From positions 1,310,123 through 1,374,122 of the forward strand of contig JAWQFM010000008.1 in assembly GCA_033442325.1 (NCBI GenBank): DNA of 64,000 nt, written 5' to 3'. The notes under the pieces were generated by a model. That model was not told where the DNA came from, ran no database searches, and saw nothing but the letters and a program-made list of their open reading frames with translations. The DNA comes from Salpingoeca rosetta (taxonomy: Eukaryota > Protista > Choanoflagellata). Below are positions 19,068 through 46,983 of the stretch, piece after piece. Position 1 is the stretch's first letter. Each line of letters starts with the position of its first letter. Both the position numbers and the translations under genes were made by a program.

Positions 19068-21136
19068 CAGAGGATGACATCAGTGAGCGGAAAAAATAAG
19101 TTTTCATCACCGGCACACATTCAAAACCACCCGAAATATGCGTCAATCGCTTCCATTTTCCGTTGGCTGTCCCACGCACAACAGAGAACGAAGACAGCAA
19201 ACCTCAGAGCGCAAGCACAGAACCATCTTTTCCTGTTACCTCCGGGATTGCCGATTATTCACATTGATGCCAACGACTTTCTGCATCCAAGATGGCGCAG
19301 CGCAGATCGGCCACCGCAGCAGGCAGCACTGACGGAACACCGCCGTGTGTCAAGAAGAAAGAAGGCCGATTGTACACCGGGAGCCTTGACAATGAGGAGT
19401 ACGACGCCTTCAAGAAGTGGCTCAAGAAGCAGCGCAAGGAAAACTCCAGGACGCTGACGGTGGACGCAAAGCTGGACATCGTCGCCGTGCAGGCGTACTT
19501 TCGCCATGAGAAGTTTGTCAACGCGAACAAGTCAGGGAGGCCCAAGCAGTATCGGTTCACGGCACTCGCAAAGAACGTCCTTCAGCGCAGCACAGACGTC
19601 TGTCAACAAGCATGGAAGGACTACGAGCGCGCGCAAGCGGTGTCAGTCGCAGACAACGACGGGCCACGCGGGACCAAGACGACGAAGTTCAAGCGCACTG
19701 AGGCATTGCGTGTGAAGCTGCAGAACTGGTTGTACGAGCGCACTGTCAAGGGCAACCGAACTGTGGCAAAGGACGTGCTCGGCTTCTTCTGCTCCTCCGG
19801 TGTGCTGCCGATGTACTCTGATCCCACTTCGAAAGCGAACGCCCTGAGAGCTGTGCAACGATACCTGGAGTCCCTTGGCTACGAGAGAGGTCAGCGAGGC
19901 GGTTGCACCACCTACATGGAGAAGGAGGAGGTGCTGATCAAACGAGACGCGTACATCACCCAGATGATCAAGGCCCGACAGCAGCGGCGACGCATTGTCT
20001 ACCTCGACGAGAGCTACATACACCACCACTACCGCCGGCATGATGAGTCGCTGTACGACCCCGGTGATAACCGCCTGCTCCCCAAGCAAAAGCACAAAGG
20101 CCGGCGCTTCTGTTTCATCGCGGCAATCATCTCAAGCGACCCTGCAGTACCAGAAGCAGAGCGATCCGAGGAACATCGTGCACAGCTGTTACCCGAGACG
20201 CTGGACATCTTTGAGGGGGGCAAGAAGCAGAGTGGCAAGGCGCAGACCAAAGACTACCATGGCATGTTTGACAGTGCGTACTTTGAGCGCTGGATGCAGA
20301 CGCTGCTCGCCACGCTCGACGCCCGTGGCATCAAAAACACCATCATTGTCATGGACAACGCCAAGTACCACAAGTCACTCCCAGCGGACACGCCCAAGCA
20401 ATCATGGAAGAAGGCAGCCATGGTCGAGGCCTGCACGGCGCGCGGCCTGCCAGTATCCGACACCGACACTCGGGCCTTGCTGTGGGCCAGGCTGCGCGAC
20501 CACATTGCACAAACAGTCAAGCCCGTCGTCGTGCAAATGGCAGAGGACGCTGGGCACGAGGTGCTGTGGACACCGCCGCATTACTCCGACCTTCAGCCCA
20601 TCGAGATTGTTTGGGCAAACGTGAAAGGAGACGTTGGTCGACAGTACAACTACGACACAACGTTCAAGGACGTGCGCCAGCGGTTGGACGAGGCGTTTGC
20701 AACCCTGACACCGAAGACAGTTGAGGGATGCATTGCAAAAGCAAATGCTCGGCTGGATGAGCTTTACAGGCAGATCACGAGCCTCGATGAGGTGGATGAG
20801 GAGGCAATCGATGATGGGGTGTTCGATGACGGGCAGCGTGATGATGATGATGAGAATATGGAAGAGGTCGATGTTGTGAACGAGGACAAAGACAAGGACA
20901 GTGACGAGGACAGTGACGAGGACGACGATGAGGGTGAACATGAAGACGAGGATTAGTGTGAGTGGTTTGCCTGTTGTGTGGTTCATTGTGACTTGGTGGG
21001 TGGATGTGGGGTGGGGTGCCGTAGTCAATTGTGCTGAGGGAAAGGGGGTTTTTAGCGTGTTCTCTGTGGTCGAGAACGGCGAAATAAATCGTCAAACACG
21101 TTAATGTGATTTTCCGCTCACTGATGTCATCCTCTG
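19068..21136 (+). mobile_element. Autonomous IS630-Tc1-mariner DNA transposon, DD82E (Sailor-type)
   Basis: Perfect 27-bp TIRs (cagaggatgacatcagtgagcggaaaa at 19068-19094, reverse complement at 21110-21136). Right end is followed by TA. One intronless transposase ORF inside. Confidence 0.93.
19292..20956 (+). CDS. DDE transposase (DD82E), 554 aa, with acidic C-terminal tail
   Basis: IVYLDESY (D1), IIVMDNAKYH (D2), PPHYSDLQPIEIVW (E). I counted 82 residues between D2 and E. Confidence 0.93.
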   Translation: MAQRRSATAAGSTDGTPPCVKKKEGRLYTGSLDNEEYDAFKKWLKKQRKENSRTLTVDAKLDIVAVQAYFRHEKFVNANKSGRPKQYRFTALAKNVLQRSTDVCQQAWKDYERAQAVSVADNDGPRGTKTTKFKRTEALRVKLQNWLYERTVKGNRTVAKDVLGFFCSSGVLPMYSDPTSKANALRAVQRYLESLGYERGQRGGCTTYMEKEEVLIKRDAYITQMIKARQQRRRIVYLDESYIHHHYRRHDESLYDPGDNRLLPKQKHKGRRFCFIAAIISSDPAVPEAERSEEHRAQLLPETLDIFEGGKKQSGKAQTKDYHGMFDSAYFERWMQTLLATLDARGIKNTIIVMDNAKYHKSLPADTPKQSWKKAAMVEACTARGLPVSDTDTRALLWARLRDHIAQTVKPVVVQMAEDAGHEVLWTPPHYSDLQPIEIVWANVKGDVGRQYNYDTTFKDVRQRLDEAFATLTPKTVEGCIAKANARLDELYRQITSLDEVDEEAIDDGVFDDGQRDDDDENMEEVDVVNEDKDKDSDEDSDEDDDEGEHEDED

Positions 21137-21591: not shown

Positions 21592-21691
21592 NNNNNNNNN
21601 NNNNNNNNNNNNNNNNNNNNNNNNNNNNNNNNNNNNNNNNNNNNNNNNNNNNNNNNNNNNNNNNNNNNNNNNNNNNNNNNNNNNNNNNNNN
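21592..21691. other. Assembly gap (100 N)
   Basis: Run of N. Confidence 1.
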
Positions 21692-21744
21692 TCAACTGCA
21701 TCCGCCTCACACGTTCGCTGTCCTACACGACACGCGATGCACAG

Positions 21745-22429
21745 CCTTGCTGAAGAGTGTGTGCAGCAGTTGAAGCAGGGCGAGTCCTTGGAGCAATGCA
21801 AGCAGCTCAAGCACAGGGCGCTGGGTCGCATGGCGACTGTCTTGCATGATCGCAAGTCCTCGCTGGGGTACCTTGAGCAATTGCGGCAGCATTTGTCGCG
21901 TCTGCCTTCGATCGACCCCAACACGCGCACGCTGCTTGTGACGGGCTTCCCGAACGTGGGCAAATCGAGCTTTGTCAACAAGGTGACGCGCGCAGATGTT
22001 GAAGTGCAGCCGTACGTATTTACAACCAAGTCCCTCTTCGTCGGACACACAGACTACCAGTATCTTCGCTGGCAGGTACGCGTCCTCGGCACAAGCATAT
22101 GCACGTACACGTTACGCAGAAGTTGCGCATACACACGTGCATGACAGATCGTGTAGTAGTGCCACCGTTTACCCGGTCCATCTCCTGCAAGCACCACTCA
22201 TTCAAGCTCACACTGCACACAAACGCCCCTGCCATATAGGTGATTGACACACCGGCCATTCTTGACCACCCGCTGGAGCAGCGCAACACGATTGAGATGC
22301 AGGCCATCACGGCGCTTGCGCATCTGCGCGCGTGTGTGCTGTATGTGATGGACCTGAGCCAGCAGTGCGGCTTCACTGTGGAGCAGCAGTTTTCCCTCTT
22401 TGAGAACATCAAGCCCCTCTTTGCAAAGA

Positions 22430-22464
<35 letters not shown>

Positions 22465-23714
22465 CTGGATACGGTTGTGACGAGTAGCTGTGACGTTGGT
22501 GATTGTCGTCGTACTGCTTCCACTTGCCGCTTGCCATCGCGCTCACGCAACCCCCCACCCCACCCCAACCCAATGTTTGCATGTTTGCCACGGCAGCCGC
22601 TGGCGATTATTGTGAACAAGGCTGACACGATGAAGATTGAGGATGCGCCGACGGAGGTGCAGGAGCGGCTGAAGGCGTATGAGGCCGAGGGCATCAGCGT
22701 GCTGAGCATGAGCACGCTCACGGGGGAGGGCGTGGCGCAGGTCAAGAACGCAGCCTGCGACAAGCTCATGACATACCGTATGAAGTCGAAGCTTCAAGCT
22801 ACACCCACGCCACACACAATCGTTTCCAAACCAAAGACTGCCCCCGCCACAACAACTGCAACAACAGCAACAACCGCTAATCTCAGCACCAACAACAACC
22901 CAAACACTAACAACACCAACAACTACGTGACGTCCACACCCAGCGCGTTCGCTCCGAAAACCGACGATGCAGAACTCCCACCCTCCTACGCCGCGCCCAG
23001 CACAACCGACACCACCACGAGGACCAACATCGGCACCGACGCTGACGACTCGGCTGCAGTCCGTGGTCCGTCCACGCTGTGCGTCACACTGCACACGCTG
23101 CGGGACTGTTTGCGCATCTCCACGCTGTGCACGCTGGCGGCTGTGGGCATCCAGCCGCTGTATCACCACTTTGTGACGGGCGTGTGGCCGTGGTCTCAGC
23201 GGGCGTGGTTCGTGGCATCGACGATGGCGGTGCACGAGGTGATGTACTACGGCGTCAACTCGGCCTTCCTGCTCATGGACCGCTTTGGCATCTGCAGCAA
23301 GCACAAGATTGACCGAGGCAGCACGCCAGAGCCATCGCGCGCACTCATTGCCAAGACGCTGCGCAAGAGTGCTGTGTCGCACTGGGTCATCCAGCCCATC
23401 TCGCTGTACGCGCTGTTTCCGCTCTTCCTGCGTATGGGCATGGATGTTGCGGGCCCGCCGGCAGCAGGGGCGCTTGTGCCGATGATGTGTCGGTTTGGCT
23501 TCAGCGTGCTTGTCAACGACGCCTTGTTCTACTGGACGCACCGCCTCCTGCACATGCCGCAGCTGTACGCCCGCTTCCACAAGCAGCACCACGAATACAA
23601 AGGTTCGGCAAAGGCGGTGCAAGGCTGCCCGAAAGCTGCCCCTGTTGTGGTTTTCATGCTTCTACATGTGTGCGTTTGTGTCTGTCTGTGTGTCTGTGCG
23701 TGTGTGTGTGTGTG

Positions 23715-23788: not shown

Positions 23789-24648
23789 ACTGTCTGTCTG
23801 TCTGTCTGTCTGTCTCTGTCTCTGTGTGTCTGTGTCCGACCTTTGTCTGCGGGAGCTTAACGTTCGTCATCCGGTATATTCACATGCGCGTTTCTTTGCC
23901 ATCTCACCCCACACCGCTGCCCCCTCCCCCAACCCTTGTGCACCGCCAGCCACCACGGGCTTTGCTGCGGAATACGCGAGCCCCCTGGAGCAGCTACTCA
24001 GCAACCAGGTGAGGGGACACGGTGGTGCGGTTTTGGCTGCGCTGGCGTGCAAATGAAGAGTGCGTTTGTTTGCTTGTTTTGTAGTTTGTTCATCTGAATT
24101 GGTCCATTCCACCGATAACACACGCATACACGTGCGCCCACCACGTACCACGCATTCATCTCTGTGCGACATGACTCCTTTCGCACAGCTGCCTGTGGTT
24201 GTCGGCCCTCTGCTGTGCCGTATGACCACAACAGAGTGGCTTGTCTTCCTCGTCTGGCGTCTCTGGCGCACATATGAAGACCACAGGTGTGGCATCGCGC
24301 TTTGCATATTTTTTTTTTCACACGGCACACCCCACCGGCTTTCTGTACTGCACCAACAACCCTGCTGCTGGCCGTTTATCTTTTGCTCTTCGCACGTTCT
24401 GCCTTGTGTTCAATTGCACATTTTCCATGCGCATGTACAATCAACTGTGCATGCACCGCTCGTGCATTCTCTCCTACACGTACCACTTTCATGCGTGGTG
24501 CTCACCGCCACTGGTTTTTTTTTTTTTTTTTGCTTGCATGCAGCGGGTACGACTTTCACAACACGTTCCTGGGCCGCCTCGGCTTGTCGCACGGCTACAG
24601 TGCCATCTACCACGATTTTCATCACTCACACAACCTCGGGAACTTCGG

Positions 24649-24679
<31 letters not shown>

Positions 24680-25018
24680 GATGCAGAAGCACGAGGGACG
24701 GATGATTTAGGAGCAGAGACGCACACAAACATGCACACAGTAACATGCTTGAGCAATGGCACTGCTAATTTGATTGATTGCATCGTACATTGCTTGGTTT
24801 ATTTCTTTTCGTCTTCGGAAACATCACTCACACTCGCACACTCACACATCTACGCCCACACACGCATACACGCACATGCGTGCGCACATGTACCCCTGCT
24901 TGCGCCATCAGGACCCGCCAATGCGTTCTGGGATCACATTGGCGGCACACAGGACGCGTACTTGCGGTACATTCGTCGAAACAACATCCCATCCTACCAC
25001 ACCCCATACCTCTTTTGA
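21745..25018 (+). CDS. Chimeric gene: duplicated NOG1 GTPase domain fused to an ERG25/methylsterol-monooxygenase-like fatty-acid-hydroxylase-family oxidase (5' end hidden by the gap)
   Basis: Exons 21745-22075, 22240-22431 and 22597-23602 encode NOG1 G1 (GFPNVGKSS), G3 (DTPA) and G4 (NKAD). The same exon then continues through a T/N-rich linker into [25 protein letters not shown]. Later exons give [32 protein letters not shown] and FWDHIGGT, with stop at 25018. Confidence 0.75.

Positions 25019-28502: not shown

Positions 28503-33766
<5,264 letters not shown>

Positions 33767-37418: not shown

Positions 37419-46983
<9,565 letters not shown>

What the first reader, a model, noticed from the sequence alone, without database searches (positions are those of the whole stretch)
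22240..22260. The NOG1 copy carries the G3 Gly>Ala change equivalent to the dominant-negative Nog1 mutation
Seen: the parent reads GTG ATT GAT ACG CCA GGT ATC (VIDTPGI, 31029-31049) and the copy reads GTG ATT GAC ACA CCG GCC ATT (VIDTPAI). The copy also changes switch I from QPYAFTTK to QPYVFTTK (GCG>GTA at 22016-22018). G1 and G4 are intact. Established: Gly>Ala in the DxxG motif of Nog1 (mammalian G224A, yeast G223A) restricts switch II and dominantly inhibits 60S maturation. Inference: the domain is a conformationally locked pseudo-GTPase or nucleotide sensor. It may be tolerated because it lacks the NOG1 C-terminal tail and is membrane-anchored, or it may act as a regulator.
Basis: partly seen in the sequence, partly recalled or inferred. 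Interest (0 to 1): 0.85.

Follow-up and report, generated by a model that had tools for sequence, protein, structure and literature searches.

The report
Switch-dead NOG1 domain fused to hydroxylase
In the choanoflagellate Salpingoeca rosetta, a partial copy of the essential ribosome-assembly GTPase NOG1 is fused to a membrane lipid-hydroxylase gene and really does carry the Gly-to-Ala switch change that is lethal when engineered into normal NOG1, but the evidence fits a tolerated defect in a passenger domain better than a newly evolved function.

Summary
The copy reads GCC (Ala) at 22255-22257 and GTA (Val) at 22016-22018. The parent reads GGT and GCG. DNA contigs from two independent studies carry the copy's letters without a difference. 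The Ala aligns with human GTPBP4 G224 and yeast Nog1 G223, the published dominant-negative site. All 119 other NOG1 proteins retrieved keep DTPG.

The organism is Salpingoeca rosetta. The copy is part of an annotated 635-aa gene. It has NOG1 helical-tail and G-domain exons, then a low-complexity linker and an intact fatty-acid-hydroxylase enzyme in one frame. The fusion is unique in the databases searched. The hydroxylase has lost its own start codon.

The copy is old (dS about 0.66 in unconverted parts), but most of its G domain is identical to the parent through gene conversion. The G3 change lies in a 36-nt unconverted patch beside a non-homologous intron. The copy's substitutions hit conserved and variable NOG1 positions at chance rates.

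One RNA contig shows copy exon A spliced to an upstream NOG1 exon, probably hidden in the adjacent 100-N gap. No RNA evidence covers the DTPA codon.

Best reading: a switch-dead passenger module. A locked regulatory pseudo-GTPase is not excluded.

The parts
21592..21691 (.). 100-N assembly gap directly upstream of the copy. It probably hides the copy's own versions of NOG1 exons 1-3 and its promoter.
   Evidence: Searches show the N run. RNA contig X18 record 11 joins copy exon A to 20-24 letters identical to the end of parent exon 3. That sequence occurs only once in the assembly, at 29202-29221.
21692..21744 (+). 3' end of the intron upstream of copy exon A. The acceptor AG is at 21743-21744. 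The annotated start ATG at 21737 lies inside this intron.
   Evidence: Searches show the same cag|CCTTGC acceptor as the parent at 30067|30068. There is weak colinear similarity to the end of the parent intron (score 17, shuffle maximum 16).
21745..22075 (+). Copy exon A: the last helices of the NOG1 N-terminal domain (strongly diverged, 21745-21883), then G1 and switch I (identical to the parent at 21884-22015 and 22019-22060).
   Evidence: Pfam NOG1_N and MMR_HSR1 match. For the 5' part, dS is 0.66, dN 0.285 and omega 0.43. It is transcribed in X18 (record 11, 21741-21911, 1 other letter).
22016..22018 (+). Switch I codon, GTA (Val) where the parent has GCG (Ala201).
   Evidence: DNA contigs with 0 other letters; Ala in all 38 distinct homologues.
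22076..22239 (+). Copy intron A-B (GT..AG, 164 nt). It has no detectable similarity to the parent's 627-nt intron.
   Evidence: local alignment score 11 against a shuffle mean of 11.5.
22240..22431 (+). Copy exon B: G3/switch II and the Pfam NOG1 domain. Six differences lie in 22246-22260, and 22261-22431 is identical to the parent.
22255..22257 (+). G3 codon GCC (Ala; residue 119 of the annotated model, equivalent to parent G226, human G224 and yeast G223).
22432..22596 (+). Copy intron B-C, identical to the parent intron (153/153) apart from the length of the (GT)n run.
22597..23602 (+). Exon C, one continuous reading frame. It runs through NOG1 G4/G5 (to 22781, where homology to the parent ends), a low-complexity Thr/Asn/Pro linker (about 22782-23060), and then hydroxylase helices 1-4 with His boxes 1 and 2.
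   Evidence: An RNA contig runs from 22752 into the hydroxylase, with splice joints at 23602^23950 and 24008^24189.
23950..25018 (+). Hydroxylase exons D (23950-24008), E (24189-24286), F (24544-24650, His box 3) and G (24912-25018, stop TGA at 25016-25018).
   Evidence: My exon model equals the database protein P0001. FA_hydroxylase matches with E = 7.5e-22.
28503..33766 (+). Parent NOG1 gene (679 aa, complete). Its exons 1-3 are at 28503-28622, 28813-28920 and 29062-29226. The exon homologous to A is 30068-30401. The G3 codon GGT is at 31044-31046 and the switch I codon GCG at 30339-30341.

Best explanation
This is a species-specific fusion gene of Salpingoeca rosetta. An old DNA-level duplicate of the 5' two-thirds of NOG1 reaches parent residue 346 and lacks the NOGCT domain and the C-terminal tail. 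It is joined in frame, through a low-complexity linker, to a fatty-acid-hydroxylase-superfamily enzyme that other choanoflagellates have as a standalone gene. That enzyme has lost its own start codon here. The hydroxylase is the conserved, expressed part. The NOG1 module supplies the 5' end (shown for the start codon, inferred for the promoter) and rides along as an N-terminal extension that is probably cytosolic. Non-allelic gene conversion from the neighbouring parent keeps most of its G domain identical to real NOG1. The Gly-to-Ala change at DxxG sits in a 36-nt island at the edge of a non-homologous intron, where conversion tracts end. By analogy with GTPBP4 G224A, Nog1 G223A and Ras G60A, the change should leave nucleotide binding intact but block the GTP-driven switch-II movement. 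The module is therefore a switch-dead G domain. It is tolerated because it lacks the Rlp24-binding C-terminal region needed for recruitment to pre-60S particles. Its last N-terminal-domain helices have also lost conserved basic and aromatic residues, and it is tied to a membrane protein. The Ala is most likely a tolerated loss of function in a module selected only to stay in frame and foldable, not an adaptive lock. Shown here: the letters, the gene structure, the conversion mosaic, expression of the hydroxylase and of copy exon A, and uniqueness of the fusion. Inferred: translation of the whole fusion, biochemical consequences, topology and lack of ribosomal function.
For: The letters are present in the assembly and in independent DNA contigs. 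The fusion model equals NCBI protein P0001, which carries NOG1_N, MMR_HSR1, NOG1 and FA_hydroxylase domains, and it was the only hit with both NOG1 and FA_hydroxylase. Hydroxylase orthologues are standalone proteins of 272-346 aa whose Met aligns about 5 residues before GPSTL. S. rosetta has no Met there, and the next downstream Met lies inside a conserved helix. For gene conversion, tracts 21884-22015 and 22261-22431 have no synonymous difference (P about 6e-9 and 2e-10 at the old-stratum pS of 0.44). Intron B-C is 153/153 identical, while intron A-B is unalignable. For relaxed constraint, the exon A 5' part has 18 of 46 residues replaced and pairwise omega 0.43, although the parent is almost unchanged against its orthologue. 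Copy substitutions hit positions that are at least 98% conserved at the chance rate, 2/5 in the G domain and 8/18 in the tail. In the converted tracts the copy has about 4-5 replacement against 2 silent differences. RNA contigs show the hydroxylase mRNA spliced and reaching into the NOG1-derived exon C (at least to 22752). Copy exon A in X18 has depth 188, against 261 for the hydroxylase contig. From the literature, G224A and G223A are dominant negative; Nog1 1-426 without the C-terminal tail is non-functional; and Nog1 and Rlp24 depend on each other for recruitment. Four long helices precede His box 1 in a confident model (pLDDT 91), which puts the N-terminus on the His-box side.
Against: In the unconverted patch around G3 (22061-22075 plus 22240-22260), 7 of 8 differences are silent and only Gly-to-Ala changes the protein. 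The exon A tail has 25 replacement to 14 silent differences (Fisher p = 0.015; P of at most 1 replacement at the tail's rate = 0.006). These core residues were therefore under protein-level selection in the copy for a long time. That fits selection for foldability, but it equally fits a functional G domain in which Ala matters. All three NOG1-derived exons keep an open frame and canonical splice sites. No RNA contig carries the copy's letters at 22016-18, 22246-60, 22651 or 22722/24, so translation of the DTPA exon is not shown. Contig depths in X17 hint that many hydroxylase transcripts lack the NOG1 part, which would favour the leader-only rival.
Confidence: 0.45

Rival explanations
1. Adaptive pseudo-GTPase. 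The NOG1-derived G domain is a selected, conformationally locked GTP- or GDP-binding module. It regulates or localises the hydroxylase, or senses guanine-nucleotide or ribosome-biogenesis state at the ER membrane. The Ala (and perhaps the switch I Val) is kept by selection against re-conversion from the parent.
For: The island of divergence centred on G3 has seven silent differences and only one replacement. This is the pattern expected when conversion across a selected site is removed. The GCG-to-GTA codon is a one-codon island inside otherwise identical sequence. The reading frame and splice sites of all NOG1-derived exons are intact. Copy exon A is expressed at the same order as the hydroxylase in X18. 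G1, G2 Thr, G4 and G5 are intact, so nucleotide binding is plausible.
Against: The G3 island is also explained by its position at the edge of a non-homologous intron. Substitutions fall on conserved and variable positions at chance rates, and recent differences are mostly replacements. No orthologous fusion was found anywhere, so there is no test of conservation. No RNA or protein evidence covers the DTPA exon. The numbers in the patch are small (12 codons).
Confidence: 0.2
2. Leader only. Most or all hydroxylase protein is made from transcripts or start codons inside NOG1-derived exon C (in-frame Met 189, 215, 235 or 239 of the annotated model). The exons carrying switch I and DTPA are then an untranslated or rarely translated 5' relic, a decaying pseudogene piece that conversion keeps looking fresh.
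For: The hydroxylase needs only an upstream Met, and several lie in exon C. In X17 no contig covers copy exon A although the hydroxylase contig has depth 136. In both RNA runs the parent's letters, not the copy's, were kept at every site where the two differ in exons A-C. The evolution of the exon A tail is close to neutral.
Against: In X18 a copy-specific contig shows exon A correctly spliced to an upstream NOG1 exon, at depth 188 against 261 for the hydroxylase. Contigs drop minority variants, so absence proves nothing. The frame is open and the GT..AG sites are kept through exons A and B. The silent-only pattern around G3 argues for past translation.
Confidence: 0.27
3. Artefact. The copy or its two changes come from misassembly, a collapsed repeat or sequencing error.
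For: A 100-N gap lies 150 nt upstream of the first diverged exon. No DNA contig was laid on 21692-21881 in either DNA run.
Against: The copy and the parent lie on the same gap-free stretch, 21692-43576. DNA contigs of two studies eleven years apart carry the copy-specific intron, the patch and both codons with 0 differences, and they link the copy's exon C variants to the hydroxylase. 20 runs from 9 studies hold half or more of the stretch's sampled words.
Confidence: 0.03

Closest known systems
Engineered dominant-negative NOG1: human GTPBP4 G224A and yeast Nog1 G223A
   Same: The same protein family and the same residue, the glycine of the G3 DxxG motif, changed to the same amino acid (alignment; literature).
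   Different: Those are full-length proteins that dock on pre-60S particles and fail to leave. This natural version stops at the equivalent of human residue about 349. It lacks the NOGCT domain, the Rlp24-binding region and the tunnel-inserting tail. Its last N-terminal-domain helices are heavily mutated, and it is fused to a membrane enzyme. Dominance was not tested and is not expected.
Ras G60A (and the Galpha DxxG Gly-to-Ala mutants)
   Same: The same motif position. In Ras the mutant binds GTP but cannot adopt the active switch conformation (as summarised in PMC6968927; the Galpha cases rest on my own knowledge).
   Different: A different GTPase family. The Ras mechanism of dominance, GEF sequestration, has no known counterpart for NOG1.
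PseudoGTPases (G-domain proteins with degenerate G motifs, such as CENP-M and the p190RhoGAP pG domains; from my own knowledge)
   Same: A G domain with an altered catalytic or switch motif that is kept inside a larger protein.
   Different: Those are conserved across lineages and have shown roles. This one is confined to a single species, is partly overwritten by its active parent, and has no shown role.
FeoB (N-terminal cytosolic G domain fused to a polytopic membrane domain)
   Same: The same architecture, a TRAFAC-type G domain in front of a membrane-embedded domain. The Pfam FeoB_N model even matches weakly.
   Different: FeoB is an ancient, conserved transporter with an active G domain. 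Here the membrane part is a di-iron hydroxylase-type enzyme and the G domain is a recent NOG1 derivative with a dead switch.
Standalone choanoflagellate fatty-acid-hydroxylase orthologues (for example Monosiga brevicollis MONBRDRAFT_27469)
   Same: 50-64% identical across the whole enzyme part, with all three His boxes conserved.
   Different: They have their own start codon and no NOG1 part. In M. brevicollis the gene is not next to NOG1. In the closest relative in the database, NOG1 and the hydroxylase bear consecutive gene numbers.

Membership tests
NOG1 / GTPBP4 (nucleolar GTP-binding protein 1) | Complete N-terminal helical domain (Pfam NOG1_N, 160 positions) | tested here: inconclusive
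   Only profile positions 104-160 are in the assembled sequence, and they are strongly diverged. An RNA contig shows splicing to an upstream exon identical to the end of parent exon 3, so the rest may lie in the gap.
NOG1 / GTPBP4 (nucleolar GTP-binding protein 1) | G domain with the Pfam NOG1 signature (PF06858) | tested here: met
   PF06858 matches with E = 3.6e-27 and MMR_HSR1 with E = 2.5e-15. The match to human GTPBP4 has E = 5e-102.
NOG1 / GTPBP4 (nucleolar GTP-binding protein 1) | NOGCT domain and long C-terminal tail (Rlp24 binding, insertion into the exit tunnel) | tested here: not met
   P0001 has no PF08155 match, whereas the parent has one. Homology ends at parent residue 346.
Active TRAFAC/Obg-class GTPase | G3 motif DxxG with the invariant glycine | tested here: not met
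   DTPA at 22246-22257. 119 of 119 other hits have DTPG.
Active TRAFAC/Obg-class GTPase | G1 (GxxxxGKS), G2 Thr and G4 (NKxD) | tested here: met
   [11 protein letters not shown] and NKAD are present.
PseudoGTPase | G-domain sequence with a disabled catalytic or switch motif | tested here: met
PseudoGTPase | Shown loss of hydrolysis or of the conformational switch, with a retained non-enzymatic role | not testable with these tools
   This needs recombinant protein and genetics.
Dominant-negative Nog1 allele (functional class) | Docks on pre-60S particles and blocks 60S maturation | not testable with these tools
   The region needed for co-recruitment with Rlp24 is absent, so this is not expected.
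Fatty acid hydroxylase superfamily (PF04116) | Three histidine boxes (HxxxH, HxxHH, HxxHH) after four membrane helices | tested here: met
   HRLLH is at residue 492, HKQHH at 505 and HDFHH at 588. These His residues are invariant in 62 homologues. The model has pLDDT 91.2 with four long helices before box 1. The best structural match is the Scs7p hydroxylase domain, but it is weak (Z 4.4).

The most novel reading that the evidence does not exclude
A natural 'dominant-negative-type' NOG1 G domain has been tethered to the ER by fusion to a lipid hydroxylase and kept by selection as a locked guanine-nucleotide-binding regulator. It would couple membrane-lipid modification to the growth or ribosome-biogenesis state. 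It sits 8 kb from its essential parent and exchanges sequence with it, so every copy-to-parent conversion across the G3 codon would create a lethal allele.
Probability: 0.12. Interest if true: 0.75.

Novelty: new variant of a known kind. Interest (0 to 1): 0.42.

Why it matters
If the module is made as protein, this is a natural experiment on a substitution that is lethal in the full-length factor. It would show which parts of NOG1 must be removed or mutated for the switch-dead G domain to be harmless. It would also give ribosome-biogenesis laboratories a ready-made, evolution-tested truncated variant to compare with G223A and G224A.

For genome evolution it is a clear case of a chimeric gene born between neighbours, with three unusual features. 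The enzyme part has become dependent on the donated 5' end. The donated part is continually rewritten by gene conversion from an essential parent. An island of old divergence survives exactly at a functionally critical codon.

Salpingoeca rosetta is genetically tractable, so the competing readings can be tested directly. If the neutral reading holds, the finding is an instructive but ordinary example of domain decay masked by gene conversion.

Tried and rejected
1. Assembly artefact or haplotig: rejected. Both loci lie on one gap-free stretch, and independent DNA contigs agree.

2. Retrocopy: rejected. The copy keeps introns at the parental positions, with the same acceptor sequence and an identical intron B-C.

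3. RNA support for the DTPA codon: not obtained. The RNA contigs that lie on exons A, B and C-left carry the parent's letters (7/4, 6 and 3 other letters). They are the parent's mRNA laid on the copy, so the joint 22073-22238 is not evidence for splicing of the copy.

4. Homology search with the copy-specific N-terminus (P0001:1-110) for transcript-derived fragments: nothing copy-specific was found; the best hit was 84% identical.

5. AlphaFold2 of the whole protein without an alignment: unusable, with pLDDT 41.

6. Foldseek of the hydroxylase model against the PDB found no match at E <= 0.001. A profile search of PDB sequences found none. VIA-align ranked Scs7p first, but only at Z 4.4.

7. 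The search of earlier findings by place and by words returned nothing.

8. Lapik et al. 2007 (PMC2169037) is not held. It is cited only through PMC6968927.

9. A hypermutation origin for the patch: considered because all 7 silent differences are transitions (p = 0.02 against the exon A tail). The directions are mixed and the sample is tiny, so it is left unexplained.

10. A second hidden hydroxylase copy (tandem-duplication scenario): DNA contig depths give no clear 2x signal, and the genome search finds one copy.

Full report
**The observation**

Copy 22240-22260 is GTG ATT GAC ACA CCG GCC ATT and parent 31029-31049 is GTG ATT GAT ACG CCA GGT ATC. Copy 22016-22018 is GTA where the parent, at 30339-30341, has GCG. 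A self-comparison finds two homology blocks: 21773-22078 matches 30096-30401 at 90% identity, and 22230-22791 matches 31019-31568 at 95.6%. It also finds a 100-N gap at 21592-21691. Both loci lie on one gap-free stretch, and they are the only two NOG1 loci in the 55.4-Mb genome.

Logan contigs of two DNA runs from different studies (2014 and 2025) cover 21882-22062 and 22033-22422 with no differing letter. The Val and Ala codons are therefore real DNA.

**Identity and gene structure**

The database names the organism as Salpingoeca rosetta. Protein P0001 (635 aa, called 'GTP binding protein 4') is exactly the exon model I derived by hand from the sequence:
- exon A to 22075
- exon B, 22240-22431
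- exon C, 22597-23602
- four further exons ending at the stop codon at 25016-25018

P0001 carries the end of NOG1_N, MMR_HSR1, the NOG1 signature and a complete FA_hydroxylase domain. The parent, P0002 (679 aa), has the full NOG1_N and NOGCT domains.

Exon C is one open frame. It runs from NKAD through the point where homology to the parent stops (22781, parent residue 346), then through an ~85-residue Thr/Asn/Pro-rich linker, and into the hydroxylase.

**Residue equivalence**

In the HMMER alignment with human GTPBP4, the Ala stands opposite G224. The published literature confirms that G224A in mammals and G223A in yeast are dominant negative. It also cites Lapik et al. 2007 and the Ras G60A analogy. 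Of the 120 best hits, 119 have DTPG and 118 have QPYAFTT.

**The hydroxylase part**

Orthologues in other choanoflagellates are standalone proteins of 272-346 aa and 50-64% identity. Their start codon aligns about five residues before the GPSTL motif. S. rosetta has no Met there, and the next Met downstream lies inside a conserved helix. The enzyme therefore depends on a start codon in the NOG1-derived part.

All catalytic histidines are invariant in 62 homologues. A model built with that alignment is confident (pLDDT 91.2) and has four long helices before His box 1. This places the N-terminal extension on the same side as the His boxes. That this side is the cytosol is inferred from the family, not tested here. 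The only structural relative found is the Scs7p hydroxylase domain, and the match is weak (Z 4.4).

No other protein in the search combined NOG1 and FA_hydroxylase domains. In the closest relative in the database, NOG1 and the hydroxylase bear consecutive gene numbers (9181 and 9182). In Monosiga brevicollis the hydroxylase is not next to NOG1. The fusion thus arose between neighbouring genes in the S. rosetta lineage.

**History of the copy**

The copy is a mosaic.
- The 5' part of exon A (21746-21883) has dS 0.66, dN 0.285 and omega 0.43.
- The intron upstream keeps only a trace of similarity to the parent, and intron A-B keeps none.
- By contrast, 21884-22015, 22019-22060 and 22261-22431 are identical, and intron B-C is 153/153 identical.
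- With the old stratum's silent divergence, tracts without a single silent difference have P of about 6e-9 and 2e-10.

Gene conversion from (or with) the parent is therefore required. The differences that remain cluster at the two edges of the non-homologous intron A-B: two silent changes at 22061-22066 and six changes at 22246-22260, including the G3 codon. Conversion tracts need homology on both sides, so this is where old divergence should survive.

**Selection**

Two signals point in opposite directions.

Relaxed constraint:
- In the exon A tail, 18 of 46 residues are replaced, although the parent differs from its nearest orthologue at only two of about 50 residues in this stretch.
- The replacements remove conserved basic and aromatic residues.
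- They hit positions that are at least 98% conserved as often as chance predicts (8 of 18). The same holds in the G domain (2 of 5).
- The few differences inside converted tracts are mostly replacements.

Constraint:
- In the 12-codon patch around G3, seven of eight differences are silent and the only replacement is Gly-to-Ala.
- This differs from the tail (Fisher p = 0.015).
- At most one replacement at the tail's rate has P = 0.006.

The core strand and the DTP residues were thus kept at the protein level for a long time. I read this as selection for a foldable module attached to a needed enzyme. It fits a functional G domain equally well.

**Expression**

Two runs behave as RNA; their contigs skip introns.
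- They hold a spliced hydroxylase contig that runs left to 22752. That is the point where the assembly graph must branch, because the sequence becomes shared with the parent.
- The contigs lying over exons A, B and the left of exon C carry the parent's letters. They are the parent's mRNA and say nothing about the copy.
- One contig in X18 (record 11, depth 188, against 261 for the hydroxylase and 588 for the parent) covers the copy-specific 21741-21911. It continues leftwards with 20 letters that match exactly the end of parent exon 3 at 29202-29221, the only such place in the genome.
- Its left end lies exactly 30 letters before the first copy-specific base (21751), as a 31-letter-word assembly requires.

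Copy exon A is therefore transcribed and spliced at the conserved acceptor to an upstream NOG1 exon. The simplest reading is that the copy's own exons 1-3, homogenised with the parent's, lie in the 100-N gap. In that case the annotated ATG at 21737, which sits inside the intron, is an artefact of the gap. No contig shows the DTPA codon in RNA. Contigs keep only the majority variant, so this is not evidence of absence.

**Mechanism**

By analogy with G224A, G223A and Ras G60A, the Ala should allow nucleotide binding but prevent the switch-II response to GTP. Yeast Nog1 lacking its C-terminal tail cannot function, and Nog1 and Rlp24 recruit each other. The fusion lacks that whole region. This gives a concrete, though inferred, reason why the change is harmless here.

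I put the readings as follows:
- Tolerated defect in a passenger module: 0.45
- Largely untranslated leader: 0.27
- Selected locked regulator: 0.20
- Artefact: 0.03

**Novelty**

The gene model is public, but I found no paper linking Salpingoeca with NOG1 or GTPBP4. The architecture is unique in the searches run. It is a new variant of known kinds: a chimeric gene formed from neighbours, and a degenerate G domain.

Noticed in passing
window 19292-20956 (+): Intact 554-aa open reading frame with a DDE_3 (Tc1/mariner-type) transposase domain (E = 1.1e-14). It lies just upstream of the gap and the fusion gene and could be relevant to how the region was rearranged.
   Followed up: partly
window 21692-21881: Neither DNA run had any contig laid on this stretch (depth 0 in the first bin), although an RNA contig of X18 covers 21741-21911. 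The tool warns that holes prove nothing. This remains unexplained.
   Followed up: no
window 23217: All four runs, DNA and RNA, read G where the assembly has A. The change is silent (GCA to GCG, Ala) in the hydroxylase part. It is a likely assembly error or a difference between culture lines.
   Followed up: partly
window 22061-22066 and 22246-22260: All seven silent differences in the unconverted patch are transitions, and nearly every available silent transition has occurred. The exon A tail shows 2 transitions and 5 transversions at comparable sites (p = 0.02). The sample is small and no explanation was found.
   Followed up: partly
window 22017-22018 and 22722/22724: Inside otherwise identical converted tracts, the differences come as tight pairs (adjacent, or 2 nt apart), each pair made of one replacement and one silent change. 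This could be patchy mismatch repair of heteroduplex DNA or multi-nucleotide mutation.
   Followed up: no
window about 30600-30630 and 30834-30864: A motif of about 30-40 nt (atgacaaaccctttagagcgtttattt...) occurs twice in direct orientation inside the parent's intron A-B. This suggests an inserted repeat or MITE-like element and may explain why this intron no longer aligns with the copy's.
   Followed up: no
proteins P0003 and P0121 (closest relative in the database): The relative's NOG1 and its standalone hydroxylase are named gene9181 and gene9182, so they are apparently adjacent genes. This implies that the NOG1-hydroxylase neighbourhood predates the fusion.
   Followed up: partly
window 24296-24504: A low-depth X17 RNA contig (depth 6.8, with one extra T after 24308) lies within hydroxylase intron E-F. 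This indicates a little unspliced transcript or DNA carry-over.
   Followed up: no
window 43577-43712: A second run of N (136 bases) marks another assembly gap in the window.
   Followed up: no
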